The notes under the pieces are model-generated. The model was not told the origin of the DNA and searched no databases. It worked only from the letters and a program-made list of their open reading frames with translations. Of a stretch of 64,000 bases of DNA, positions 1,835 through 44,867 are shown piece after piece. The position numbers and the translations under genes are program-made. Origin of the DNA: Macrostomum lignano (Eukaryota). The stretch covers positions 124,001 through 188,000 of the forward strand of contig NIVC01000782.1 in the NCBI GenBank assembly GCA_002269645.1, given 5' to 3'. How positions within the stretch are numbered: position 1 is the stretch's first letter; the number at the start of each line of letters is the position of its first letter.

Positions 1835-2598
1835 TGGCGGCTGAGCGATGGCAGCTGCATTTCTGTGTGTGAATCAATGTGACTCACACTGACACATTTG
1901 TACAGATGAAATGAGATGAGATGTCAGTAATTTGCTTCAAATATTGACTTTTCATACATATTATATTCAGTTATTGAATCTGCCGATGATGCGTTAAAAT
2001 CCATAATGCTGCAGCACTGAACTCGACTCCCACCGCCCGAAAACCCCACGGCTCAACCGAATCGAATCAGTTAATCTACTTGGGCACAGGTAAACAAAGT
2101 TCAATAAGCAACTTTTTGATTTTGAAAAATGTGATAAACACATTAGCTGCTACAGGACAGCTGTGATACACTGGCACACATCACATGCACATTTTCATCT
2201 TAATTAACATGAAAAGCTCAGGTACTGCAACAGTTTATCAGCCTTGATTGAGCTCAGATAGAATTATAGAATGAGCACAAGTGACGTCACTGATTGGCAG
2301 CCTTCAAATCGATTTCTGTTGCTCCAAATGTTGTTTCAGGGCATGCGACTGTTGACTGCGTCAGAAGAGAGCGATTTAGGCTTCACTGCTTCGGCCTATC
2401 ATTAATAATTAATGCGCAGGCCGATAACTGCTGATTTTCATATTTATTAATATTATCTGTGGCAAACTAATTATTCAATATTATCTACAAAATATTTTTG
2501 CTGAATTAATGTTATAACTTTCGTAGAATTTCGGGAAAATACTGTCTATAACTACCAGTAGTATGCAAAAAAGAAGCCAAGTGACTCAGGTGGAAGGC

Positions 2599-5187
2599 CT
2601 CAGGTGTCAGCACTCGGTCTCAGGTGTCAGCACTCGGTCTCAGGTGTCAGCACTCGGTCTCAGGTGTCAGCACTCGGTCTCAGGTGTCAGCACTCGGTCT
2701 CAGGTGTCTGCACTCGGTCTCAGATGTCTGCACTCGGTCTCAGGTGTCAGCACTCGGTCTCAGGTGTCAGCACTCGGTCTCAGGTGTCAGCACTCGGTCT
2801 CAGGTGTCAGCACTCGGTCTCAGGTGTCAGCACTCGGTCTCAGGTGTCAGCACTCGGTCTCAGGTGTCAGCACTCGGTCTCAGATGTCTGCACTCGGTCT
2901 CAGATGTCTGCACTCGGTCTCAGGTGTCAGCACTCGGTCTCAGGTGTCAGCACTCGGTCTCAGGTGTCAGCACTCGGTCTCAGGTGTCAGCACTCGGTCT
3001 CAGGTGTCAGCACTCGGTCTCAAGTGTCAGCACTCGGTCTCAGGTGTCTGCATTCGGTCTCAGGTGCCAGCATTCGGTCTCAGGTGTCAGCACTCGGTCT
3101 CAGGTGTCAGCACTCGGTCTCAGGTGCCAGCACTCGGTCTCAGGTGCCAGCACTCGGTCTCAGGTGTCAGCACTCGGTCTCAGGTGTCTGCATTCGGTCT
3201 CAGGTGCCAGCATTCGGTCTCAGGTGTCAGCACTCGGTCTCAGGTGTCTGCATTCGGTCTCAGGTGCCAGCACTCGGTCTCAGATGTCTGCACTCGGTCT
3301 CAGGTGTCAGCACTCGGTCTCAGGTGTCAGTACTCGGTCTCAGGTGTCAGCACTCGGTCCCAGGTGTCAGCACTCGGTCTCAGGTGTCAGCACTCGGTCT
3401 CAGATGTATGCACTCGGTCTCAGATGTATGCACTCGGTCTCAGGTGTCAGCACTCGGTCTCAGGTGTCAGCACTCGGTCTCAGGTGTCAGCACTCGGTCT
3501 CAGGTGTCAGCACTCGGTCTCAGGTGTCAGCACTCGGTCAGGTGTCAGCACTCGGTCTCAAGTGTCAGCACTCGGTCTCAGGTGCCAGCATTCGGTCTCA
3601 GGTGTCAGCACTCGGTCTCAGGTGCCAGCACTCGGTCTCAGGTGCCAGCACTCGTCTCAGGTGTCAGCACTCGGTCTCAGGTGTCAGCACTCGGTCCCAG
3701 GTGTCAGCACTCGGTCTCAGGTGTCAGCACTCGGTCTCAGATGTCTGCACTCGGTCTCAGGTGTCAGCACTCGGTCTCAGGTGTCAGCACTCGGTCGCAG
3801 GTGTCAGCACTCGGTCTCAGATGTCTGCACTCGGTCTCAGGTGTCAGCACTCGGTCTCAGGTGTCAGCACTCGGTCTCAGGTGTAAGCACTCGGTCTCAG
3901 GTGTCAGCACTCGGTCTCAGGTGTCAGCACTCGGTCTCAGGTGTCAGTACTCGGTCTCAGGTGCCAGCACTCGGTCTCAGGTGTCAGCACTCGGTCTCAG
4001 GTGTCAGCACTCGGTCTCAGGTGTCAGCACTCGGTCTCAGGTGTCAGCACTCGGTCTCAGGTGTCAGCACTCGGTCTCAGGTGTCAGCACTCGGTCTCAG
4101 GTGTCAGCACTCGGTCCCAGGTGTCAGCACTCGGTCTCAAGTGTCAGCACTCGGTCTCAGGTGTCTGCATTCGGTCTCAGGTGCCAGCATTCGGTCTCAG
4201 GTGTCAGCACTCGGTCTCAGGTGCCAGCACTCGGTCTCAGGTGTCAGCACTCGGTCTCAGGTGTCAGCATTCGGTCTCAGGTGTCAGCACTCGGTCTCAG
4301 GTGTCAGCACTCGGTCTCAGGTGTCTGCATTCGGTCTCAGGTGCCAGCACTCGGTCTCAGATGTCTGCACTCGGTCTCAGGTGTCAGCACTCGGTCTCAG
4401 GTGTCAGTACTCGGTCTCAGGTGTCAGCACTCGGTCCCAGGTGTCAGCACTCGGTCTCAGGTGTCAGCACTCGGTCTCAGATGTATGCACTCGGTCTCAG
4501 ATGTATGCACTCGGTCTCAGGTGTCAGCACTCGGTCTCAGGTGTCAGCACTCGGTCTCAGGTGTCAGCACTCGGTCTCAGGTGTCAGCACTCGGTCTCAG
4601 GTGTCAGCACTCGGTCAGGTGTCAGCACTCGGTCTCAAGTGTCAGCACTCGGTCTCAGGTGCCAGCATTCGGTCTCAGGTGTCAGCACTCGGTCTCAGGT
4701 GCCAGCACTCGGTCTCAGGTGCCAGCACTCGGTCTCAGGTGTCAGCACTCGGTCTCAGGTGTCAGCACTCGGTCCCAGGTGTCAGCACTCGGTCTCAGGT
4801 GTCAGCACTCGGTCTCAGGTGTCAGCACTCGGTCTCAGGTGTCAGCACTCGGTCTCAGGTGTCAGCACTCGGTCTCAGGTGTCAGCACTCGGTCTCAGAT
4901 GTCTGCACTCGGTCTCAGGTGTCAGCACTCGGTCTCAGGTGTCAGCACTCGGTCTCAGGTGTAAGCACTCGGTCTCAGGTGTCAGCACTCGGTCTCAGGT
5001 GTCAGCACTCGGTCTCAGGTGTCAGTACTCGGTCTCAGGTGCCAGCACTCGGTCTCAGGTGTCAGCACTCGGTCTCAAGTGTCAGCACTCGGTTTCAGGT
5101 GTCAGCACTTGGTCTCAGGTGTCAGCACTCGGTCTCAGGTGTCAGCACTTGGTCTCAGGTGTCAGCACTCGGTCTCAGGTGTCAGCA
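2599..5187. repeat. 20-bp satellite (CTCAGGTGTCAGCACTCGGT)n, about 129 units, with a ~1.08 kb higher-order duplication
   Basis: Direct reading. Diagnostic variants recur at ~1078 bp offset (AGATGTATG 3402/4480; 2-bp-deleted unit ~3535/~4613; GTGTAAGC 3881/4960). Confidence 0.98.
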
Positions 5188-6253
5188 AACAAAGGCAGTC
5201 AGCGAGGCGAGGACGGCGCGGCCGCAGAGGACGCAGGTGGTTGTGGAGGCGTTGCAGGCAGCGCAGAGCACAAAATGAGCACACGGCAGGGAGACCCGGC
5301 TCCGCGCTCGCTGGCGGCAGCGAAGGCACCGGTCGTCCTGCGGCTCGGCGCTCGGGTGCAGCGGCTGCTGCGGGGGCGGGGGCGGGGCGGCGGCGGTCGC
5401 GGGCGACTCGGCGGGCGCCTTGGAGGCGGCAGCCGCGGGTTGGCAGCCGCCGCCGCGGAGGCCGCAGAGACCGCGCAGCAGCGACTCGACAGGCAGGTCG
5501 AAGACGCGGGCCGCGGCGCCGCCCAGCCGGGCCTCCAGCTCGTGAGCGGCCAGGATGAGGTCGCCCGGCCTCGCCAGGTCGCCGCCGCCGCCGCCGTCTC
5601 CGCCGAGGTGCCGCCGCGCCACCGCCAGCACCAGCGCCGGCCTGGCGATGCCGAAGGCCTCCGCCCGCGCCACCGGCGCCGCCTCCACGCGGCCCAGCAG
5701 CCGCTCCGCCGCTCGGCCCAGCTCCGACGCGTCCCTGGCAACCAGCTCGGCGTCCCTGGTAACCAGCGGCTCGCCGCTCCGACGACAGCGCAGGAGGCGC
5801 AGCAGGCGAGCGAGCTGGCAGTCGGGGCTGGCGGCTGCGTGGGCGGCTGGCGGGGAGTCACGTGACCCGGGGTCGGCGCTCGGCAGCCGGCAGTCGCAGA
5901 GAAAGCAGCGCAGGTCGCCCGAGGCGGCGTCGAGGAAGAGGCCCGCCGCTGCCGCCGCCTCCGACGCCCCAGACTGGCAGCGCAGCGAGTGGGGCGCGAA
6001 CTCGGGACGTTTCGATGCGACCACAGCTTGCAGGAGGCCGCCTGTGTTAGTAAAATTACAAGTGCTGAAGTTATATTTTTATTTCTAACCGTTAGCCGTG
6101 ATTAAATAATGACAGACATCTGGACTCACCTGAGAAAAATGCAGCTTCTGTAACGTTCCGTGACTGCTCACAATCGCTATTACTGAGCAGCTGCTCAATT
6201 AATGACAGATCAGATGGAGAAAGAAGGCAACCTGCTACTGAGATGCTGGCAGT
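5182..6253 (-). CDS. IAP: IAP-like protein (BIR - UBA-like - C-terminal RING); 5' end not found
   Basis: Exons 6253-6130 and 6041-5182 join in phase across an 88-bp GT-AG intron. BIR ligands C-x2-C-x18-H-x6-C (AAAGLFLD..GDLRCFLC..H..PDC). UBA-like EAFGIARPALV..GDLIL. IAP-type RING CLRC..LPCAHFVLCAAC..CVLC at the C-terminus. Confidence 0.8.
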
Positions 6254-7184
6254 CTGTAGAGTTAGCTGTGTGTGCGCTGTGTGTGTGTGGTAATCAGAAC
6301 TATAGCAGCTCGGATTCTAAAAATGTAAATGCAGCCATGCACAAGTAGGCTTTAAGTATCTTTTATCTTCTTAAGTACCAATGTAGAACTTGTATAGAAG
6401 TTAATGTGAAAACTAAGGAAGTTTAAAGAGAAAATTTCGTCAGTTAAATTTAGTAACTAACTGCTGCCAATGAAGTATCTTATTTGCTCTGGATACAAAA
6501 GTTCAGTTGTGGAAGTTCACTTCGGTAAGTCTTCACGCACTAAAATGTTGCCTCCGTTGATTGAAGAAGGTTTTGTTTGTTTTAATAAAGTTAATAAAAG
6601 TATTAAGAAATAACCATAAAATGCTTTCAATACGTAGCGTATAATGCTTTTATCACTAGACATTCAAGCTGAAATCCTACGGAACAAACTACAGAACTAT
6701 AGAACAATTAATTCTCAAAGTCAAACTTGCAACTTATAGCCACAGAATTTTGTCAAAGACTGGACAGCCAAAAAATTCAAGATACAGCTAAACCTTCAGC
6801 TGATGGAATCAGCAACATGTCACCAATCAGACTCGTAGCACTGACTGATCATGAAAAAAGCAAAAGTAAATCCCTATGTAGGATTTTTATCCGGATACTC
6901 GATCCTAAGAAACGTTCAATAATTCTGTTTTTATTGTTTACGACCTAATACGTCAGTTTGAGGCAGGTATCTGACTCTAACTGGTTTTAAACCCCCCCCC
7001 CCCTGCGCCGGCCTGGCCTCGCTTTGGTGGGTTGGTGGGGTGCTGGTGCTCTGCGTGCGTGCAGGGCTTAGGGCAGCCTCCCCCTCCGCTCTGTGCTATT
7101 TAGTCACGCGTCGCGGCCGCTGAGTCGGCGTAATTTTGGCAAAATATTTTTAGCCTGCCTGATTTGCCAAGCACGGCACTCACA

Positions 7185-8201
7185 ATGGACTCTACGTTAG
7201 GCAGCATGACCGTGCAGGCCCTCAAAGATGCCTTCCGCGAGAAGGCCTTACCTACAAGTGGCAATAAAGAAGAGCTGATAGGCCGCCTGCTCGCTGCAAG
7301 CCAGGCCGAACGAGCTCCCAGCGATGACGACGGTGACGACGACCAGGACGAGGATGACGTGCGCCGGGCTGCGCCAGCGGAGGAGGCCACAGAAGCGCAG
7401 ATTAGGCAGACTCAGAAAAGGATCGAGCTGCTGAAACTGCAGAAGGCTGAGGCCCAGTTGCAGGATGAAGTGCAGTCGATCCGCAGTGGCGCCGGATCGT
7501 CCCCGCTGGCCAGAGGAGGGCCGGACATCTACGCCAGCCTGTTCGGGGACCAGAGCCGACAACCGAGGTTTGATTCGGCCGGAGCCCAGCGGCCCCCATC
7601 AGCGCTGCTCATCCCGGAATTTCTGGACGAGAGGCAGCAGTCGGGAGGATGGCTGACACAGGAACGTGGTCGCCTGACTCTGAAAGGCGCAACGTCGAGC
7701 CTGTCCGGAGTCAACTTCGGCCAGTGGGTGGCTGCCAACGCGCGGATCATGCAGCGGCTGCTAGAGACCGGCCAGCTGGTGGCGCCCGGTACGGATGGAC
7801 AGCCCGACTGCAAGAGGCTGAGCGCCTACCTCAACTTTAACATCCACATTGGCGAGCTGATCGACGCTGGCTACGACTGGAAGGTGGTGCTCCAGTACGA
7901 CCAGGACATGAGGCTGCAGCAGCACTCGCGACAGCGCGACTGGGACAGCCCCGATCTGAACCTCATCATCAAGCATATGACGGCGCCCAAAAACCTGCGA
8001 GCTGCTGGCCCAGTCGCGGTCGGTCAAGGAGTCCAGGGTCACCGTAGCAGGGGCCAGCTGTCATCCGCTGGACAGGTCATCTGCGGCCTGTTCAATAGCA
8101 ACAAAGGCTGTCACAGACACACCTGCAATTTCGCCCACATCTGCCGCATCTGCGAAGGGAGCCACTCAAAGCTGCAACACAGCTCGGTGGCTGCCGAATA
8201 A
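7185..8201 (+). CDS. Retroelement ORF1 (gag-like): N-terminal SAP domain, C-terminal CCCH-type zinc finger
   Basis: ATG 7185. SAP-like MTVQALKDAFREKALPTSGNKEELIGRL. Central ..QYDQDMRLQQ..W. C-terminal ICGLFNSNKGCHRHTCNFAHICRICEGSH is typical of DIRS/Ngaro ORF1. Confidence 0.82.
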   Translation: MDSTLGSMTVQALKDAFREKALPTSGNKEELIGRLLAASQAERAPSDDDGDDDQDEDDVRRAAPAEEATEAQIRQTQKRIELLKLQKAEAQLQDEVQSIRSGAGSSPLARGGPDIYASLFGDQSRQPRFDSAGAQRPPSALLIPEFLDERQQSGGWLTQERGRLTLKGATSSLSGVNFGQWVAANARIMQRLLETGQLVAPGTDGQPDCKRLSAYLNFNIHIGELIDAGYDWKVVLQYDQDMRLQQHSRQRDWDSPDLNLIIKHMTAPKNLRAAGPVAVGQGVQGHRSRGQLSSAGQVICGLFNSNKGCHRHTCNFAHICRICEGSHSKLQHSSVAAE

Positions 8202-10510
8202 AAAAACTGAGCAAAGAGGCGGGTCGCGGCGGCACCAGTTTTAGCCCTAAGCGGACGGCGTCTGATAGACAGTCCAAAATTTTAATTCCATGCGAGACAG
8301 CTGCTCGCACTGCCACTGGCCCTGCCGCTCGCCCTGCCGCTCGCCCTGCCGCTCGTCCTGCCGCTCGCACTGCCGCTCGCCATGCCACTCGCCCTGCCAC
8401 TCGCCCTGCCGCCGGCCCTGCCGCCGGCCCTGCTGCCGGCCCTGCTGCCGGCCCTGCTGCCGGCCCTGCCGCCGGTCCTGCTGCCGGTCCTGCTGCCGGT
8501 CCTGCTGCCGGCCCTGCCGCCGGCCCTGCCGCCGGCCCTGCCGCCGGCCCTGCCGCCGGTCCTGCTGCCGGCCCTGCTGCCGGTCCTGCTGCCGGCCCTG
8601 CTGCCGGCCCTGCTGCCGGCCCTGCTGCCGGTCCTGCTGCCGGCCCTGCTGCCGGTCCTGCTGCCGGCCCTGCTGCCGGCCCTGCTGCCGGCCCTGCTGC
8701 CGGTCCTGCTGCCGGCCCTGCTGCCGGTCCTGCTGCCGGCGCTGCTGCCGGCCCTGTTGCCGGCCCGGTGGCTGCACTCCGAAAACGTTGGCCGCTGTTA
8801 ACTGCTGCTTGGACACCAGTCCTGCTCGGAGACTCGGACGCGGAGTTTCTGATCGCGGGAATTCGCGATGGCTTTCGCATCACCGACGCGGCTCCGACCA
8901 GCGAATCCCAGCTCGAAAATCATGCATCCGCCTGCTGCGAGGCAAATCGGAATGCCGTTGAGCTGCAGATCAGAGAGGAGGTCGTGGCTGGCCGGTACAT
9001 CAGCGCAACTGACTTGGGCATCGCCAGGCCGACCATCATCAGCCCACTGGGCGCCGTCCCGAAGGCAGACGGCGCCATCCGCCTGATTCACGACGCGTCC
9101 GCGCCACAGGGCAACAGCCTCAACGATCTGTACAAGCCCCGCCAGAAGATGAAGTTTGCCAATGTCGAGGATCTCACCAGGCAGCTGGCACCAGGCTGGT
9201 TCATCAGCAAGGTCGACCTACGCCACGCCTACCGAAGTGTTCAGGTGCACCCAGACTGCTATAAGGCGACGGGGCTCCGGTGGACGTTCGAGCTGGACGG
9301 TCAGCCCACCTATCTGGTTGACACGCGACTCCCATTCGGTGCGGCGGCATCAGTCAACATTTTCCACCGCCTGACGCAAGCTGTCAAGCGCTTTATGTAC
9401 AGGCAATTCTCGCATCTGTCCAAATTCGTCGTCATCGCATACCTCGACGATTTCTGCATAGCTGCCCGGGACTACGAGGTCTGCCTGCAGCTGCACAATT
9501 TTCTGCTGGCCACCCTGCAGCACCTCGGCTTTGAGATCAACTGGGCCAAGACGCAGAGCCCAGCCACTTCGGTCACTTTCCTGGGTGTGCAGATCGACAC
9601 ATTGACTGGCCTGCTGTCACTGCCCGCCTAGAAGATGGACGGCCTTCGAGAACTTCTCCAGGACTGCGCCAACTCAAAGAGCCTGGAAAAACGTCGCCTT
9701 CAGCACCTAGTCGGCAAACTGAACTGGTTCTGCAAAGTGGCCAAACCTGCAAAGGCCCTGCTTCGCGCGCTCCTGGAGATAACCATCGCTATTCCTGAGC
9801 AGCATCATCGAGTACCGGTGCGCGGCGAGCTACTGGCCTAGTTGCAGTTCAGGCAGCATGAAATCCCAGTGTTCCCGACCGACAAGCTGTGGCGGCGTGC
9901 ACGAGTGCTGGCAGCGGTCGAGACGGACGCCTGCGTCAGTGCCGGTGGCATGATCCTGAGCACCTCTGATGGCCAGCGCGAGTTCCGCCTCGTCGACTTC
10001 TGCAGTGACGCCGGTGGCATCTTCCTGAGCGAGCACATCAACGCCAAGGAGACGGTACTGCCGCTGCTCGCCATCATTCTGTTCCAGGAGCAGCTGGCCG
10101 GCGGCAAGGTGGCCTGCTACGTCGACAGCAGCGCGGCGGTCGGCACCATCAACCGCGGTGCCTCCAGCAACCCGATCGTCATGACCCTGCTCAAAACGGC
10201 CACTCTGGCAGCGCTGAGGCACGACTTTCAGTTTCGAGCTCACCATATGCCGGGGTCCTGGCAGCTGCTGAGCGACCCGCTGTCGCGCTGCCTGACGCAT
10301 CCCCGCCACATGCTGCTGTCTCTGCTGTGCTACTTCGGCCGGGCCAAGGCGCAGCCGGAAGATCTGCGCAGGGCCTGCCTCAATGAGTCAACGGCGGCCC
10401 GGTTGCTTGAGCAGGCGTTGCTCGCGCTGAGCCCCGGTCTCTGGCGCAGTTCTCGAGCGGAGCGAGTTGCGACGGCTGAAGCAGATCCCGAGCTCAGGTA
10501 CGAGTCTTAG
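8099..10510 (+). pseudogene. Retroelement ORF2: reverse transcriptase + RNase H in one frame, interrupted by TAG at 9629 and 9839
   Basis: Frame open from 8099 with no ATG upstream of the RT-like segment. Motifs W..D..F...GI.DGF, PLGAVPK.DG.IRLIHD, SKVDLRHAY, RLPFG, YLDDF. RNase H TDAC, HINAKE, YVDS, HHMPG..DPLSR. ORF-track pieces 8768, 9635 and 9842 share the same frame. Confidence 0.88.
8305..8767. repeat. 12-bp coding repeat (GCCGGCCCTGCT)n, about 38 units, in the ORF2 frame (AGPA linker)
   Basis: Direct reading; stop-free in the RT frame and continuous with the RT N-terminus. Confidence 0.95.
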
Positions 10511-12824
10511 AGCTATTGCTTGGACCTGGCTTTTTTGGCTTGGTTTAATTTATTCTGCGGCTCGTTGATTTGATTTTACACGCTTGTCTCCTTCCTCCCT
10601 CTTTCTGTTGGTGTTGGGGTTCGTTTTCCCTTTCTGGGCCGCGTCTGCCGGTCTTTTGCGCCACTTGCTTTTATTCTGCGTTAGTCTTTTGGGGTTTAAA
10701 TAAGTACGATTTAGGTGACCATTTAAAATAACTTTTTTAGATAGATGTTCACTTTCGCAAGCTGTGACAGTACAGCTCAGTGTTTATGTGACGAAGTTCT
10801 AGCTCGTAATTTAGATTCTATTTTTAGCTCACTTCAATAGCAAGTGCTTCCTGCAGTGCTGCATAAGACGCATAACGTACGCTTGTGCATTTTAATGGCT
10901 CTGTTCCTACCTTACATCTTGTAGCGATTTGTTAATCAGCAGCGGCTAGAGCGGAACCTTGAAGTATCTCCATCAGTCTTGCGCTTCGGTTGGGTCAGTT
11001 CACGGGTTTCAAAATTATTTGAACTGTCTAGACTATTTATCTTTGTGCTAGATTAGGGCGAATTTCGTTTTTGCAAAAATAGACTGAATGTATTTATTTA
11101 TAGTTGTGAAGTGCAAGTTGCTCAACACCTACTAAAGCGTACTTGCCTTTTTTAACACGAAGGTATGAACATTTTTTTACTTCAGCAGATGCTGTGTGCA
11201 ACCTGATACGAGTTCTACAAATAGAAAAAAAAATGTCTTTCGGTTTTCGTTTTCATTATAAAAAGTTAACGGTTGAGAATTAACCGTTCGTTAGAAATAG
11301 AAATCTACATTTATTTTTAGAAAAAAATATTTTACAGAATCGCAAAAATAGACGCGAGAATAATGCTCAAGTGTCTAAAAGGGAGAAGCAATAATGAGTT
11401 GAAGGCTAGCGCCAGAATATGGCGATGCTGATAATTTTTTGCTACATTCATTGTCACGTTGGATCCTTTACATGTACCTGCAATGCCATTTTCAAGTTGT
11501 GTTTATTGCTTTTGTCATATTGCAGCGTGAAGATGCTTGACAATCAACTGGTTGTAATGAACTACGCTCGTATTGTAGAGACTATTAAAAATAAGATTTA
11601 GGTTAGGTTGGGTTAAGAAATTGTGAAAATTGCAGTGGTGTGGTATCAGAGCGTGGTGGAGTGCAGCAGTTGTGAACAGCTGCCCTCTTACGAGTGCAAA
11701 AAGCCACAAGTGCTTGCTGGCGGAGTGCACGCTGCCCTGAAAGTCTGTCTCAACTTCCAAGGCTATTTATGTATTTTATGTGGGGCAGGGATTCAAGTGA
11801 TGTACATCTAATACCAAGTAACTTCCGATGACGCACGAGAGAGAAGGGTCCGTGGGAATCGACCAGAATTGCGAGTTTGGAAATCATCGCATTATCCGGT
11901 TTTGTGAACATTTTGAATCAGCTGCATGAAGGAAAATTTATTAAAAATACGCTAATCGTTACTAATTTTAAGAGCCTGACGATGCCTGACGCGAGGCGAA
12001 ACATGTCGCATAAAAAATGATAGCGCTCACCTTCTTAATTCTAATTACGAAATAAACATACATAAAAGGCTAATGAGGAATAAAATTAATTTTCGCCGTG
12101 ACGAGATTTAAATTTTAAAAACTTTGTTTGGTGATAAAAACGTTTGGTGCCCACTAGACAATTTCTCTTTTCAAAATTCTAGAGAGAAATGAATAAAGAG
12201 AACCCCGAGGGAGACGCAGCTTTCACGCTGCGTACGCTCGTACCTATAGGAGCTAAAAATAGCCACAGAAAAAGATGTGTACAACGAGCGTACGAGTTTA
12301 ATTGAAGAGCTGGGGCAATTCCACGGTTTTTCCGGCGTGCCATATGCCTAATTACTTTTCAGAGTGCACACAACGACAGCCCCAGTTTGCTTATTTAGTG
12401 TCTAATCTGAGTCTGAAGACATTCATTGTATTTAAAGCATTTCTAAACATGCTGCTCACAGCAAGTACTCATATTCATACGTAGCTGTCACCTCATTCCA
12501 TCAGTTTCAAATAACAAACTGCAGCCAACGCCACCAAATGCTGTTTTCTTGTCGATTCTGAAGACTCAAACGGAGCACCTTCAGTTTATTTAAAACAATT
12601 GAAACATTTCGACAGAGCATTCAACTGAGGATGAAGCAGATCGCAAATGCAGCCTGAATACCTGACAGTAGTATGCAAAGGATATTATTATTATTATTGA
12701 TAGAAATGGCACATTTAACATTGCAATCGCATTCGCCTATTAGAATAGACGCAATCAGGCTTTGAGTCCGGGCCGATATGTATCGAAAAGGCCCAGCATG
12801 CAGTGAGAATTGCAGCCTGAGTGA

Positions 12825-13035
<211 letters not shown>

Positions 13036-13069
13036 CTGTGGGGGGAGCGGCGACTGCGGTTTGTTGGTG

Positions 13070-13600
13070 CTGTGGTGTCACTCTGGGTGTCACTTTGGGT
13101 GTCACTCTGTGTGTCACTCTGTATCACTCTGGGTAGCTGCGGCACTCTGTGTCACTCTGGGTAGCTGTGGCACTCTGTGTGTCACTCTGGGTGTCACTCT
13201 GTGTGTCACTCTGGGTGTCCCTCTAAGTGTCACTCTAGATGTCACTCTGTGTGAAACTCTGTGTGTCACTCTGTGTGCCACAGAGTGTCTCTCTGTGTGT
13301 CACTCTGGGTAGCTGCGGCACTCTGTGTGTCACTCTGTGTGTCACTCTGGGTAGGCGCGGCACTCTGTGTCCCTCTGTGTGTAACCTTGTGTCACTGTGT
13401 GTCACTTTGTGTCACTGTGTGTCACTCTGGGTACTGTAGCTGCTGCACTCTATGTGTTACTCTGGGTAGCTGTGGCACCCTGTGTGTCACTCTGCGTAGC
13501 TGTGGCACCCTGTGTGTCACTCTGCGTAGCTGTGGCACCCTGTGTGTCACTCTGCGTAGCTGTGGCACTCTTATCACTTAAGTTACTCCGGGTAGCTGTT
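13070..13600. repeat. GTCACTCT-core minisatellite
   Basis: Variable units GTCACTCTGTGT / GTCACTCTGGGTAGCTGCGGCACTCTGTGT. Confidence 0.9.
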
Positions 13601-13754
13601 TAGTGTGGGGGTGTCGCTCTTAGCTCCTAAAATCCTAAAGGAGAAAACCTAACTCCCAACTCCTAAAAAATTTAGTCACTCCTAAAATTCCTAATTTGTC
13701 AATTTAGGGTGTAAATCTCAGTTGCTTTGAGTGTCACATAATGTGTACGCACTC

Positions 13755-14372
13755 CAGGTGTCACTCTCATCGCTCACAGGCACTCCAGCTGTCATTCTCA
13801 TCACTCACAGGCACTCCAGCTGACACTCTCATCACTGACAAGCACTCCAGCTGTCACTCTCATCACTGACAAGCACTCCAGCTCTCACTCTCATCACTGA
13901 CAAGCACTCAGATGTCACTCTCATCACTCACAGGCACTCCAGCTGTCACTCTCATCACTCACAGGCACTCCAGCTGTCACTCTCATCACTCACAGGTACT
14001 CCAGCTCTCACTCTCATCACTCATAGGCACTCCAGCTGTCACTCTCATCGCTTACAGGCACTCCAGCTGTCACTGTCATCACTGACAAGTACTCCAGCTC
14101 TCACTCTCAGTCTCATCACTGACGGGCACTCCAGATGTCACTCTCATCACTGACGGGCACTCCAGATGTCACTCTCATCACTCACAGGCACTCCAGATGT
14201 CACTCTCATCACTCACAGGCACCCCAGATGTCACTCTCATCACTCACAGGCACCCCAGATGTCACTCTCATCACTCACAGGCACTCCAGATGTCACTCTC
14301 ATCACTCACAGGCACTCCAGATGTCACTCTCATCACTCACAGGCACTCCAGATGTCACTCTCATCACTCACA
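13755..14372. repeat. 31-bp satellite (GATGTCACTCTCATCACTCACAGGCACTCCA)n
   Basis: About 20 units; same family as 22400-22875. Confidence 0.92.
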
Positions 14373-14981
14373 GTATGAGATGAGCGCTCCGTCGGACTGT
14401 ACAATCTACTGTTAATTTATATACATTTCTGACTTTTATCGACCCGTTCTTTGTCTTAATTGTTAAATAAAAATGAACAAATAAATCGTTACTAATTTTA
14501 AGAGCCTGACGATGCCTGACGCGAGGCGAAACATGTCGCATAAAAAATGATAGCGCTCACCTTCTTAATTCTAATTACGAAATAAACATACATAAAAGGC
14601 TAATGAGGAATAAAATTAATTTTCGCCGTGACGAGATTTAAATTTTAAAAACTTTGTTTGGTGATAAAAACGTTTGGTGCCCACTAGACAATTTCTCTTT
14701 TCAAAATTCTAGAGAGAAATGAATAAAGAGAACCCCGAGGGAGACGCAGCTTTCACGCTGCGTACGCTCGTACCTATAGGAGCTAAAAATAGCCACAGAA
14801 AAAGATGTGTACAACGAGCGTACGAGTTTAATTGAAGAGCTGGGGCAATTCCACGGTTTTTCCGGCGTGCCATATGCCTAATTACTTTTCAGAGTGCACA
14901 CAACGACAGCCCCAGTTTGCTTATTTAGTGTCTAATCTGAGTCTGAAGACATTCATTGTATTTAAAGCATTTCTAAACATG

Positions 14982-16508
14982 TGTTGTACTCGCGGGCTGC
15001 GATCTCGTCTAGCCCGGTCGTTTTGTTTTCCCCGGGTAGCGGGTTCGGTGCGGGACTGCCCCGGGCGCGCAGCGGAGGGATGGACAGAGGACGAACGACT
15101 GGCGCTCCTCGAGGCGGATTGCCACTCCGAGGGGAAGAGGAAGAGATGCGACCCGGGGCGCACAGGCACTCCTCGGTCACGGAAGGCTCGGGGTACTTCC
15201 GCGGTCAGCGGAGCGGATAGCCACTCAGAGCCGGCCCGGGAGTCACCGAGGTGAATGTGAAACGAGGTGAATGTGAAGGATTGGCCGGGGCGTACAGACA
15301 CTCCGGACCAATCAAGAGATACGAGGTGATGGATTAGCTGGGGCGTACAGACACTCCGGACCAATCAAGAGATACGAGGTGATGGATTAGCTGGGGCGTA
15401 CAGACACTCCGGACCAATCAAGAGATACGAGGTGATGGATTAGCTGGGGCGTACAGACACTCCGGACCAATCAAGAGATACGAGGTGAAGGATTGGCCGG
15501 GGCGTACAGACACTCCGGACCAATCAAGAGATACGAGGTGATGGATTAGCTGGGGCGTACAGACACTCCGGACCAATCAAGAGATACGAGGTGATGGATT
15601 AGCTGGGGCGTACAGACACTCCGGACCAATCAAGAGATACGAGGTGATGGATTAGCTGGGGCGTACAGACACTCCGGACCAATCAAGAGATACGAGGTGA
15701 TGGATTAGCTGGGGCGTACAGACACTCCGGACCAATCAAGAGATACGAGGTGAAGGATTGGCCGGGGCGTACAGACACTCCGGACCAATCAAGAGATACG
15801 AGGTGAAGGATTAGCTGGGGCGTACAGACACTCCAAGCCAATCGAAGAGTGCAGGTGAGCAAGGGGGTGAGTAGGTTAAGCGATGAGGCGGCGAGGATGG
15901 AGGGAAGACACGTGCAGAGAGCCCCAAAAAACGCGAACGCAACCCGAATAAACGTAATTTAAGCTCACCGGGAGGGGTCAAACCGACTCATGCAACGCAG
16001 TTTATTTGGCCGTAGTAACTGTTCTGGCAGCTCGGAGACGGCGGGTGGCACGGATTAGCTTGCTACGAAGTGTTCCGATAGTTTACTGGGCTCGTGCAGT
16101 TTTGTACTTTTATGCTAGTTTTCTTACTCAGTTGCTGGTGTAGCTCTAACCGCAAAAACCAAGCAGCGTGCCACCGGCCGGCTCCAAGCCAGCTAATAAA
16201 TAGTATGCCAAAAAATGGGGGAGTGGGCCAAACCGGCCTGAGCGCAAATACTCACACAACAGAACCCCGCGAGCACCCCATCCTAGCCCAGCCAATCAAA
16301 GCACGTGCTGGGTAAGGCTTTACGAACGAGGGGGGGGGTAGAAAAGCGAGGGTCTGCCGCCCCAGCCAGCCAATCAGAGCACACGCCGGCTGCCTAAAAC
16401 CAAAGCCGGCTGAACCAACTCAAACCAGCTAGGCCGGCAGACCGGGCGGTTCGCATGCGACAAAAAAAACATGTTGATGAGAAGGTCATTGTGGCGCAGG
16501 CCACAACA
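14982..16508. mobile_element. Solo LTR (1527 bp), TGTTGT...ACAACA, 4-bp TSD CATG
   Basis: CATG at 14978-14981 and 16509-16512. The paralogous copy has the empty site CTAAACATGCTGCTCAC (CATG 12448-12451). TG..CA termini with a 6-bp inverted repeat; no coding sequence. Confidence 0.9.
15266..15849. repeat. 53-bp tandem array (11 units) inside the LTR with CCAAT and GGGGCG motifs
   Basis: GTACAGACACTCC recurs every 53 bp from 15292 to 15822. Confidence 0.95.
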
Positions 16509-16926
16509 CATGCTGCTCACAGCAAGTACTCATATTCATACATAGCTGTCACCTCATTTCATCAGTTTCAAAAAATTAAATGCAGCCAACGCCACCAAAT
16601 GCTGCTTTTTTGTCGATTCTGAAGACTCAAACGGAGCACCTTCAGTTTATTTAAAACAATTGAAACATTTCGCATTCAATATTCATTCAACTGAGAATGA
16701 ATGTTGAAAACATTCAAAACATTCAACTGAGAATGAAGCAGATCGCAAATGCAGCCTGAATGCCTGACAGTAGTATGCAAAGGCTATTATTATTATTATT
16801 GATAGAAATGGCACATTTAACATTGCAATCGCATTCACCTATTAGAATAGACGCAATCAGGCTTTGAGTCCGGGCCGATATGTATCGAAAAGGCCCAGCA
16901 TGCAGTGAGAATTGCAGCCTGAGTGA

Positions 16927-28403
<11,477 letters not shown>

Positions 28404-30270: not shown

Positions 30271-44767
<14,497 letters not shown>

Positions 44768-44867
44768 GACAGCTCGGCTGAGTCAGCAGCGAAGTGATTG
44801 TTTGAGCTCGCACATGTATGCATTCATTACATTTTATGCTATGTATGTTATGTTATGCCCAACTAGG

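What the first reader, a model, noticed from the sequence alone, without database searches (positions are those of the whole stretch)
8099..8260. Classic -1 slippery heptamer A_AAA_AAC at the ORF1/ORF2 junction, followed by a 0-frame TGA
ORF2 lies in the -1 frame relative to ORF1, is open from 8099 and has no ATG upstream of the RT-like segment. In ORF1 phase the junction reads GAA TAA AAA AAC TGA (8196-8210). An X_XXY_YYZ heptamer (8201-8207) directly before a stop is the textbook layout of a programmed -1 frameshift, and GC-rich sequence follows. It works only if TAA 8199 is a recent mutation or is read through. Gag-pol frameshifting is standard in LTR elements and retroviruses, but to my knowledge it is not the usual description for DIRS-type elements.
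Basis: partly seen in the sequence, partly recalled or inferred. Interest (0 to 1): 0.72.

Follow-up and report, generated by a model that had tools for sequence, protein, structure and literature searches.

The report
Dead frameshift signal in a retrotransposon
The A-rich seven-base "slippery" site between the gag-like and reverse-transcriptase genes is real and is kept in 14 distant relatives, so it is very probably the signal that lets ribosomes slip back one base to make the polymerase. In this copy it is a disabled relic inside a truncated, broken Ngaro-type retrotransposon.

Summary
A_AAA_AAC (8201-8207) lies in ORF1 phase and a 0-frame TGA follows it. The -1 frame is open from 8099 into the reverse transcriptase (RT), with no ATG before 9149.

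The comparative evidence is new. In 14 relatives whose RT is also -1 to gag (RT identity 38-58%), an in-phase slippery heptamer sits 0-8 codons before the gag stop, and within 2 codons in 13 of them. It is A_AAA_AAC in 11, A_AAA_AAT in 1 and C_CCA_AAA in 2. The closest gag relative (39% identical) ends on the same heptamer and the same TGA.

In all 14 the codon ahead of the heptamer is a sense codon. Only the window copy ends ORF1 there, so its site cannot work as it stands.

The copy also has two internal stops in pol, no tyrosine recombinase (YR) gene and no terminal repeats. The GC-rich sequence after the heptamer folds no better than shuffled sequence.

Gene order (gag, RT/RNase H, YR) and the split direct repeats of one relative make the family Ngaro-type, not DIRS1-type. 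One sister clade has gag and RT in one frame across a single TGA in a leaky-stop context.

Verdict: a relic of a family-conserved gag-pol -1 frameshift site. The mechanism is ordinary; I found no open paper describing it for this order.

The parts
6990..10510 (+). GC-rich block: what remains of an Ngaro-type tyrosine-recombinase retrotransposon (gag plus RT/RNase H only). The 5' edge is approximate, at a C-run. The 3' end is truncated.
   Evidence: The composition changes at about 6990, and after 10510 the DNA is T-rich and then AT-rich. A YR profile built from 6 relatives finds nothing in any frame of the window. No split direct or inverted terminal repeats were found.
7185..8201 (+). ORF1, gag-like, as it stands (first ATG to its stop). 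It ends one codon short of the point where the heptamer could be decoded.
   Evidence: The only homologue found among 5.8 billion proteins is P0001 (39% identity, 92% coverage). The start Met aligns with the Met of P0001.
7197..7292 (+). SAP domain of ORF1
   Evidence: Pfam PF02037, E 7e-8, above the curated cut-off
8082..8180 (+). Cys/His knuckle at the C-terminus of ORF1 (CCCH-like)
   Evidence: Invariant Cys/His columns against P0001. The homologous region of relatives L005 and L007 matches zf-CCCH. Bounds.
8201..8207 (+). Slippery heptamer A_AAA_AAC in ORF1 phase: relic of the -1 frameshift site
   Evidence: The same or an equivalent in-phase heptamer is found in 14 relatives.
8208..8210 (+). 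0-frame TGA directly after the heptamer. It is positionally the same as the ORF1 stop of the closest relative, L001.
   Evidence: In 13 of 14 relatives the 0-frame stop lies 0-2 codons after the heptamer.
8099..10510 (+). pol reading frame (linker, RT, RNase H and a stub of the YR N-terminus), -1 relative to ORF1. Broken gene: 2 internal in-frame stops, no frameshift detected, no ATG ahead of the conserved N-terminal motif, 3' truncated.
   Evidence: Relatives align in a single frame over 8831-10288. Stop count. The RT keeps 44 of 44 family-invariant columns.
8310..8766 (+). 12-nt tandem array (38 copies, no indels) in the gag-RT linker. Read in the pol frame it gives a Pro/Ala/Gly repeat.
   Evidence: Relatives L001 and L002 carry 21-nt arrays at the same place. 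Both periods are multiples of 3.
8846..8875 (+). Family-conserved motif at the N-terminus of pol, upstream of the first ATG of the frame
   Evidence: The motif is present in every relative, of both the -1 type and the in-frame type.
9161..9595 (+). Reverse transcriptase domain (RVT_1)
   Evidence: Pfam PF00078, E 2e-17
8208..8290 (+). Stretch where a stimulatory hairpin or pseudoknot would be expected. None is predicted.
   Evidence: MFE -18.2 kcal/mol against a shuffle mean of -20.3 (z +0.73). Shorter windows give z +1.0 to +1.8. No Rfam family matches at 7900-8900.

Best explanation
The window holds a 3'-truncated, broken copy of an Ngaro-type tyrosine-recombinase retrotransposon (gag, then RT/RNase H, with the YR gene lost). 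In working members of this lineage pol has no start codon of its own. It is made as a gag-pol fusion when a fraction of ribosomes slip back one base on an A-rich X_XXY_YYZ heptamer placed 0-2 codons before the gag stop. The two tRNAs on the last two gag codons re-pair in the -1 frame, and reading continues through a short linker into the RT. In the window's clade that linker is a tandem-repeat linker. Most ribosomes do not slip, terminate at once and give gag alone, which sets a gag-to-pol excess.

The heptamer at 8201-8207 and the TGA at 8208-8210 are that signal, inherited. In this copy ORF1 terminates just before the heptamer can be decoded, so the signal is dead. That stop is most simply one of the few inactivating changes of a young but defunct copy.

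Shown: the anatomy, the conservation, the position in the family and the broken state of the copy. Inferred: that slippage is ribosomal, and that it occurs at all (no expression data).
For: (1) Heptamer, phase, TGA and the open ATG-less -1 frame are confirmed.
(2) The closest gag relative, L001 (39% identity), ends ORF1 on the same heptamer in the same phase with the same TGA, and has no stop ahead of it.
(3) Fourteen -1-type relatives at 38-58% RT identity carry an in-phase slippery heptamer 0-8 codons before the gag stop. These are L001, L003, L005, L007, L009, L013, L014 and L016-L022. The heptamer is A_AAA_AAC in 11, A_AAA_AAT in 1 and C_CCA_AAA in 2. All 14 have a sense codon ahead of it.
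(4) Such heptamers are rare elsewhere in gag: 13 in 2517 in-phase sites, 9 of them at the junction.
(5) Among the 7 first-analysed -1-type relatives, the -1 frame runs without any ATG from the heptamer to the conserved pol N-terminal motif in 4 of the 6 where it can be followed (L005, L007, L009, L013). Gene callers had to use GTG or TTG starts, or a later Met that cuts off the motif.
(6) The variants C_CCA_AAA and A_AAA_AAT keep the X_XXY_YYZ rule and the phase. Ribosomal slippage requires this; transcriptional slippage does not.
(7) A sister clade (L006, L008, L010/L011) has gag and RT in one frame across one TGA followed by CTA or CTT. So fusion of gag to pol by recoding is general in the group.
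(8) The copy is defunct: 2 internal stops in pol, no YR anywhere in the window, no terminal repeats. Yet its RT keeps 44 of 44 invariant columns, so the damage is recent.
Against: No sibling copy of the same family from the same genome could be found, so 'secondary stop' rests on outgroups only.

One other relative (L004) also has a stop directly ahead of its A-run. It looks decayed, with several stops in its pol frame that the gene caller read as Trp.

No stimulatory structure is predicted in the window. In the family only L001 and L005 show a clearly stable hairpin; L016 and L022 are marginal and the rest show none. Pseudoknots were not assessed.

Three relatives (L001, L002, L014) have an ATG between the junction and the RT motif, so independent initiation is not excluded for them.

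There are no expression, ribosome-profiling or peptide data of any kind.
Confidence: 0.75

Rival explanations
1. The stop that ends ORF1 here is the genuine terminator of this family. Pol is made in another way, such as termination-reinitiation on a non-AUG codon, a spliced or subgenomic RNA, or internal ribosome entry. On this reading the heptamer is a leftover or irrelevant.
For: L004 shows the same layout, a stop directly ahead of the A-run. No hairpin follows the heptamer in the window. The RT is well preserved, 44 of 44 invariant columns, so the copy is not an old wreck. L001, L002 and L014 have an ATG upstream of the RT motif.
Against: All 14 -1-type relatives, including the closest one, have a sense codon at that place and end gag 0-8 codons after the heptamer. 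The window still carries the homologous heptamer and TGA after its stop. The pol frame has no ATG, GTG or TTG between 8099 and 8768, and no ATG before 9149. The copy has two further stops in pol and lacks YR, so it is not a working design.
Confidence: 0.08
2. The conserved A-run works at the RNA level: the polymerase stutters and adds one A, which puts pol in frame with gag on a fraction of transcripts (transcriptional slippage). On this reading the ribosome does not slip. The window copy would be equally dead, because its stop lies ahead of the run.
For: Twelve of the 14 relatives have a run of six A at the junction; the window has seven. No conserved downstream hairpin was found. A one-base insertion gives the same -1 outcome.
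Against: All A-runs sit in the one phase that ribosomal slippage needs, and stuttering would not care about phase. L009 and L016 use C_CCA_AAA, with only four A. The 0-frame stop hugging the heptamer has no role in a transcriptional model. Established knowledge: cellular RNA polymerase II is not known to stutter efficiently on runs this short.
Confidence: 0.1
3. Coincidence or artefact. The heptamer is a chance A-run at a gene end, the open -1 frame is a by-product of a stop-free tandem array, or the stop ahead of the heptamer is an assembly error.
For: The 12-nt array is open in all three frames. The heptamer occurs 24 times in the window. Base-call errors near homopolymers are common (general knowledge).
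Against: Position and phase are conserved in 14 diverged relatives. Only the -1 frame is open on both sides of the array, and it is the RT frame. A change in A-run length would not remove the stop, because the stop's first base precedes the run.
Confidence: 0.05

Closest known systems
gag-pro / gag-pol programmed -1 ribosomal frameshifting of retroviruses and LTR retrotransposons, and ORF1a/1b frameshifting of astroviruses
   Same: An X_XXY_YYZ heptamer in gag phase close to the gag stop, pol in the -1 frame without its own start, and a fusion protein made by a minority of ribosomes. To my knowledge (not tested here) the very same heptamer is used by several retroviruses and by astroviruses.
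   Different: The host element is a tyrosine-recombinase retroelement with no protease or DDE integrase. No conserved downstream hairpin was found. The constant partner of the heptamer is a 0-frame stop 0-2 codons away. In the window the site is disabled.
Ngaro superfamily of tyrosine-recombinase retrotransposons (DIRS order)
   Same: Relatives have gag, RT/RNase H and YR in that order, with no methyltransferase. L013 has split direct repeats A1-[ORFs]-B1-A2-B2. This matches the description of Ngaro in PMC8547959 and PMC9210276.
   Different: The window copy has lost YR and the repeats. The open papers I could read say only that the ORFs 'overlap' or are 'frameshifted' and name no slippery site.
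DIRS1-like elements
   Same: Same order. The RT/RNase H is related, a gag-like ORF1 is present, and a YR is used instead of an integrase.
   Different: DIRS1-like elements have inverted terminal repeats plus internal complementary regions, a methyltransferase domain, and gag-YR-pol order with a long YR/pol overlap (PMC3266345). None of these is seen here or in the relatives.
In-frame leaky-stop (read-through) gag-pol expression, as in gammaretroviruses
   Same: The sister clade L006/L008/L010 has gag and RT in one frame, separated by one TGA followed by CTA or CTT. This is a context known to favour read-through (the context rule is from general knowledge).
   Different: This is not the arrangement in the window. 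The window's ORF1 stop is of the type and context that terminates most efficiently (general knowledge), and pol is in another frame.
Transcriptional slippage on A-runs (potyvirus P3N-PIPO type)
   Same: A short A-run at the point where a second frame must be entered.
   Different: Phase is conserved, non-A-run heptamers occur, and a stop lies adjacent. All three point to the ribosome rather than the polymerase.

Membership tests
Programmed -1 ribosomal frameshift site | X_XXY_YYZ heptamer in the phase of the upstream ORF | tested here: met
   A_AAA_AAC at 8201-8207 in ORF1 phase
Programmed -1 ribosomal frameshift site | The upstream ORF is open through the heptamer, so that its last two codons can occupy the P and A sites | tested here: not met
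   In the window ORF1 ends at 8201, and only the first base of the heptamer is inside it. The feature is met in all 14 relatives of the -1 type.
Programmed -1 ribosomal frameshift site | The -1 ORF is open across the site, encodes the downstream protein and has no start of its own | tested here: met
   The frame is open over 8099-9631. Its first ATG is at 9149, downstream of the conserved motif at 8846-8875.
Programmed -1 ribosomal frameshift site | Stimulatory hairpin or pseudoknot 5-9 nt downstream | tested here: not met
   Window z = +0.7 to +1.8. Among relatives only L001 (z -2.1 to -2.3) and L005 (z -1.2 to -2.2) show one; the others do not. Pseudoknots are not covered by the tool.
Programmed -1 ribosomal frameshift site | Conservation of the site among diverged relatives | tested here: met
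   14 of 14 -1-type relatives at 38-58% RT identity
Programmed -1 ribosomal frameshift site | Measured frameshift product | not testable with these tools
   No expression or peptide data are available.
Ngaro superfamily | RT/RNase H of the DIRS-order type | tested here: met
   RVT_1 match. A single-frame alignment to relatives covers RT and RNase H over 8831-10288.
Ngaro superfamily | Tyrosine recombinase ORF downstream of RT/RNase H | tested here: not met
   Absent from the window. Present in relatives with the H-x-x-R and Tyr signature.
Ngaro superfamily | No methyltransferase domain between RNase H and YR | tested here: met
   In relatives the pol ORF of about 500 aa is followed directly by the YR ORF. 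No MT match in Pfam.
Ngaro superfamily | Split direct repeats A1-[ORFs]-B1-A2-B2 | tested here: not met
   None around the window copy. Present in relative L013: A 2777-2935 / 6660-6818, B 6484-6658 / 6900-7074.
DIRS1-like superfamily | Inverted terminal repeats with internal complementary region | tested here: not met
   No inverted repeats of 40 nt or more in 5800-16000. L013 has split direct repeats instead.
DIRS1-like superfamily | gag-YR-pol order with a methyltransferase domain | tested here: not met
   The order in relatives is gag-RT/RNase H-YR, without MT.

The most novel reading that the evidence does not exclude
Ngaro-type tyrosine-recombinase retrotransposons as a lineage express their polymerase by gag-pol recoding. 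The ancestral mode is a -1 slip on A_AAA_AAY (or C_CCA_AAA) placed 0-2 codons before the gag stop, apparently without a conserved downstream hairpin. One clade has exchanged this for a leaky in-frame TGA. No paper I could read states this; they speak only of 'overlapping ORFs'. A much less likely reading is that a stop directly ahead of the A-run, seen in the window and in L004, is itself a working variant of the signal.
Probability: 0.4. Interest if true: 0.5.

Novelty: new member of a known kind. Interest (0 to 1): 0.35.

Why it matters
The window feature itself is a fossil and changes nothing for the host.

Its value is comparative. It led to a consistent picture of how one superfamily of tyrosine-recombinase retroelements makes its reverse transcriptase. 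A conserved slippery heptamer hugs the gag stop, and one clade has switched to stop read-through.

That picture gives annotators a rule for joining 'overlapping ORFs' in DIRS-order elements. These are now often called with spurious GTG or TTG starts, or even with an alternative genetic code.

It also offers a natural set of frameshift sites that seem to lack a strong downstream structure. That is of some interest for how much the adjacent stop contributes.

Tried and rejected
- **Sibling copies in the window:** there is none. tblastn and blastn against the window itself give a single copy.
- **Siblings or relatives by gag:** one protein only. Gag-based locus scans of viral and metagenome contigs gave nothing. 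A degenerate DNA pattern for the gag C-terminus in metagenome contigs gave nothing. An RT alignment against viral contigs gave nothing.
- **Hairpin after the heptamer in the window:** not better than shuffles at 43, 50, 53 or 83 nt. No Rfam match.
- **Pol starting at the ATG at 8290 (+1 frame, ORF 8290-8961):** rejected. That frame is open only because of the array and GC-rich sequence. Homology to relatives is in the -1 frame from about 8807 on, and the array has no indels.
- **Read-through of the ORF1 stop followed by a slip:** rejected as a working route. It needs two rare events in series, and the stop type and context are the least leaky (general knowledge).
- **Slip with the stop in the A site:** the codon ahead offers no -1 re-pairing.
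- **Intron between the two internal pol stops:** rejected. Relatives align through that stretch in frame.
- **The 498-bp direct repeat (11954-12451 / 14484-14981) as the element's split repeats:** rejected. No matching A repeat lies upstream of ORF1, and the intervening DNA is satellite shared with other places in the window.
- **The 1100-aa ORF at 2563-5865 as part of the element:** it is an artefact of a 20-nt satellite.
- **Literature:** six searches and five papers read. None names a slippery site in DIRS-order elements. The original Ngaro description is not held.
Full report
**1. What is in the sequence**

ORF1 runs from its first ATG at 7185 to 8201 (the frame is open from 7134). It is a gag-like protein with an N-terminal SAP domain (7197-7292; Pfam E 7e-8) and a C-terminal Cys/His knuckle (8082-8180).

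In ORF1 phase the heptamer A_AAA_AAC occupies 8201-8207, and TGA follows at 8208-8210. ORF1 as it stands ends at 8201, so only the first base of the heptamer is inside it.

The -1 frame is open over 8099-9631 and contains RVT_1 (9161-9595). It has no ATG, GTG or TTG before 8768 and no ATG before 9149.

Between junction and RT lies a 12-nt tandem array (8310-8766, 38 copies, no indels). It is open in all three frames. Part of the '510-codon ORF2' is therefore uninformative. Even so, only the -1 frame is open on both sides of the array, and it is the RT frame.

**2. What the element is**

The RT search gave 84 relatives, the best at 58% identity. The gag search gave one relative at 39% identity.

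Contigs of 12 relatives were fetched. Ten more loci came from an RT-alignment scan of prokaryote MAG contigs. These look like host-DNA contamination, for example in MAGs labelled Sedimenticola or Thiodiazotropha; to my knowledge these genera include bivalve symbionts.

In the relatives the ~500-aa RT/RNase H ORF is followed directly by an ORF with the tyrosine-recombinase signature. There is no methyltransferase. L013 has split direct repeats A1-[ORFs]-B1-A2-B2. That is the Ngaro layout as described in PMC8547959 and PMC9210276, not the DIRS1 layout of PMC3266345.

The window copy is a remnant, a GC-rich block from about 6990 to 10510:
- RT and RNase H align to relatives in one frame (8831-10288) with two internal in-frame stops and no frameshift.
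- After a short stub the recombinase is missing. A YR profile finds nothing anywhere in the window.
- There are no terminal repeats.
- The RT keeps all 44 columns that are invariant in the other family members, so the copy is young.

The neighbouring host gene is CHD4-like, so the host is an animal.

**3. The junction in relatives**

In every relative where RT is -1 to gag, an in-phase slippery heptamer lies at the end of gag.
- A_AAA_AAC: L001, L003, L005, L007, L013, L017, L018, L019, L020, L021, L022.
- A_AAA_AAT: L014.
- C_CCA_AAA: L009 and L016. L003 also carries it in tandem with A_AAA_AAC.

The 0-frame stop follows after 0 codons in 7 loci, 1 codon in 5, 2 codons in 1 and 8 codons in 1.

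The closest gag relative, L001, ends gag on the same heptamer and the same TGA as those that persist at 8201-8210 in the window. In all 14 the codon ahead of the heptamer is a sense codon.

In-phase heptamers of this type are otherwise rare in these gag genes: 13 in 2517 sites, 9 of them at the junction.

Among the 7 first-analysed relatives, in L005, L007, L009 and L013 the -1 frame runs from the heptamer to the conserved pol N-terminal motif (27-31 codons) with no ATG and no stop. L003 likewise has no ATG there but carries one in-frame stop in that linker. The gene callers had used GTG or TTG starts, or a later Met that removes the motif.

A sister clade (L006, L008, L010/L011; 57-65% identical to each other) has gag and RT in the same frame. 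They are separated by one TGA followed by CTA or CTT.

**4. Downstream structure**

L001 has a stable hairpin 7 nt after the heptamer (-20.6 kcal/mol, z -2.3). L005 has one 11 nt after it (-19.1 kcal/mol, z -2.2). L016 and L022 are marginal (z about -1.4).

The window, L003, L007, L009, L013, L014 and L017-L021 are no better than shuffles. The window is worse than its shuffles (z +0.7 to +1.8). Rfam finds nothing.

The constant partner of the heptamer in this family is therefore the nearby 0-frame stop, not a hairpin. Pseudoknots could not be assessed.

**5. Mechanism proposed**

Working members make gag by normal termination. They make gag-pol when the tRNAs on the last two gag codons re-pair one base back on the heptamer. 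The first pol-frame codon then starts at the last base of the heptamer.

This accounts for four things:
- the ATG-less pol frame;
- the conserved phase;
- the heptamer variants that keep the X_XXY_YYZ rule;
- the in-frame periods (12 and 21 nt) of the linker arrays in the window and in L001/L002.

In the window the signal is inherited but cannot be reached by a translating ribosome. Together with two stops in pol and the loss of YR, this makes the copy non-autonomous.

What is shown: anatomy, conservation, family position, broken state. What is inferred: that slippage is ribosomal and actually occurs.

**6. Rivals**

(a) The early stop is genuine and pol is made otherwise. In favour: L004 shows the same stop-before-A-run layout, and three relatives have an ATG in the linker. 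Against: the 14 outgroups, the retained heptamer and TGA, and the other damage in this copy.

(b) Transcriptional slippage on the A-run. Against: conserved phase, the C_CCA_AAA variants, and the adjacent stop.

(c) Chance or assembly error. Against: the conservation, and the fact that a change in A-run length would not remove the stop.

**7. Novelty**

Gag-pol -1 frameshifting is textbook for retroviruses and LTR elements. For DIRS-order elements the open literature I could search speaks of overlapping or 'frameshifted' ORFs without naming a slippery site. The original Ngaro papers are not held, so prior description cannot be excluded.

I rate the window feature as a new (dead) member of a known kind. 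The family-level pattern is a modestly interesting by-product.

Noticed in passing
L006 4986-4988; L008 1915-1917; L010 640-642; L011 805-807: One clade of relatives has gag and RT in a single frame, separated by one TGA followed by CTA or CTT. This is a leaky-stop context and suggests a switch from -1 slippage to stop read-through within the same retroelement group.
   Followed up: partly
L004 5099-6120: This relative's pol protein (P0007) was called with TGA read as Trp, and the locus does not translate to it under the standard code. Its gag ends on a stop directly ahead of a run of eight A, the same layout as the window. It is probably a decayed copy, but the coincidence is unexplained.
   Followed up: partly
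window 8310-8766; L001 1256-1323; L002 1-80: The gag-RT linker holds a tandem array in the window (12-nt unit) and in its two closest relatives (21-nt units). The units differ, the place is the same, and all periods are multiples of three.
   Followed up: partly
window 8768-10510: All three stops of the pol frame (two internal, one terminal) are TAG, while the RT keeps every family-invariant residue. This may be a mutational signature. It was not analysed.
   Followed up: no
window 2599-5187: A 20-nt satellite of 130 copies at 94% match. The 1100-aa 'ORF' at 2563-5865 and its overlapping ORFs are artefacts of it.
   Followed up: yes
window 11954-12451 and 14484-14981: A perfect 498-bp direct repeat encloses about 2 kb of short tandem arrays (12/30-nt units at 13070-13571, 31-nt units at 13749-14373). 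The 31-nt array recurs at 22396-22898. Related sequence occurs at 1-617 and 16508-17689. It could be an LTR-like non-autonomous element or a segmental duplication.
   Followed up: no
window 15273-15849: A 53-nt tandem array of 11 copies at 96% match.
   Followed up: no
window about 31200-44800, minus strand: Exons of a CHD3/4/5-type chromatin remodeller: CHDNT at 43706-44764, SNF2 at 37865-38902, CHDCT2 at 31225-31842. The best solved relative is human CHD4. The host is therefore an animal.
   Followed up: partly
L015-L022 (GenBank MAG contigs QIEB01, JBEVXV01, JBEVVS01): Contigs filed under bacterial MAGs (Flammeovirgaceae, Sedimenticola, Candidatus Thiodiazotropha) carry complete-looking eukaryotic Ngaro-type elements. 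This is most likely contamination of the bins by host (animal) DNA.
   Followed up: no
window 6990-7003: A run of twelve C marks the 5' edge of the GC-rich element block. Whether it is the true element end is unknown.
   Followed up: no
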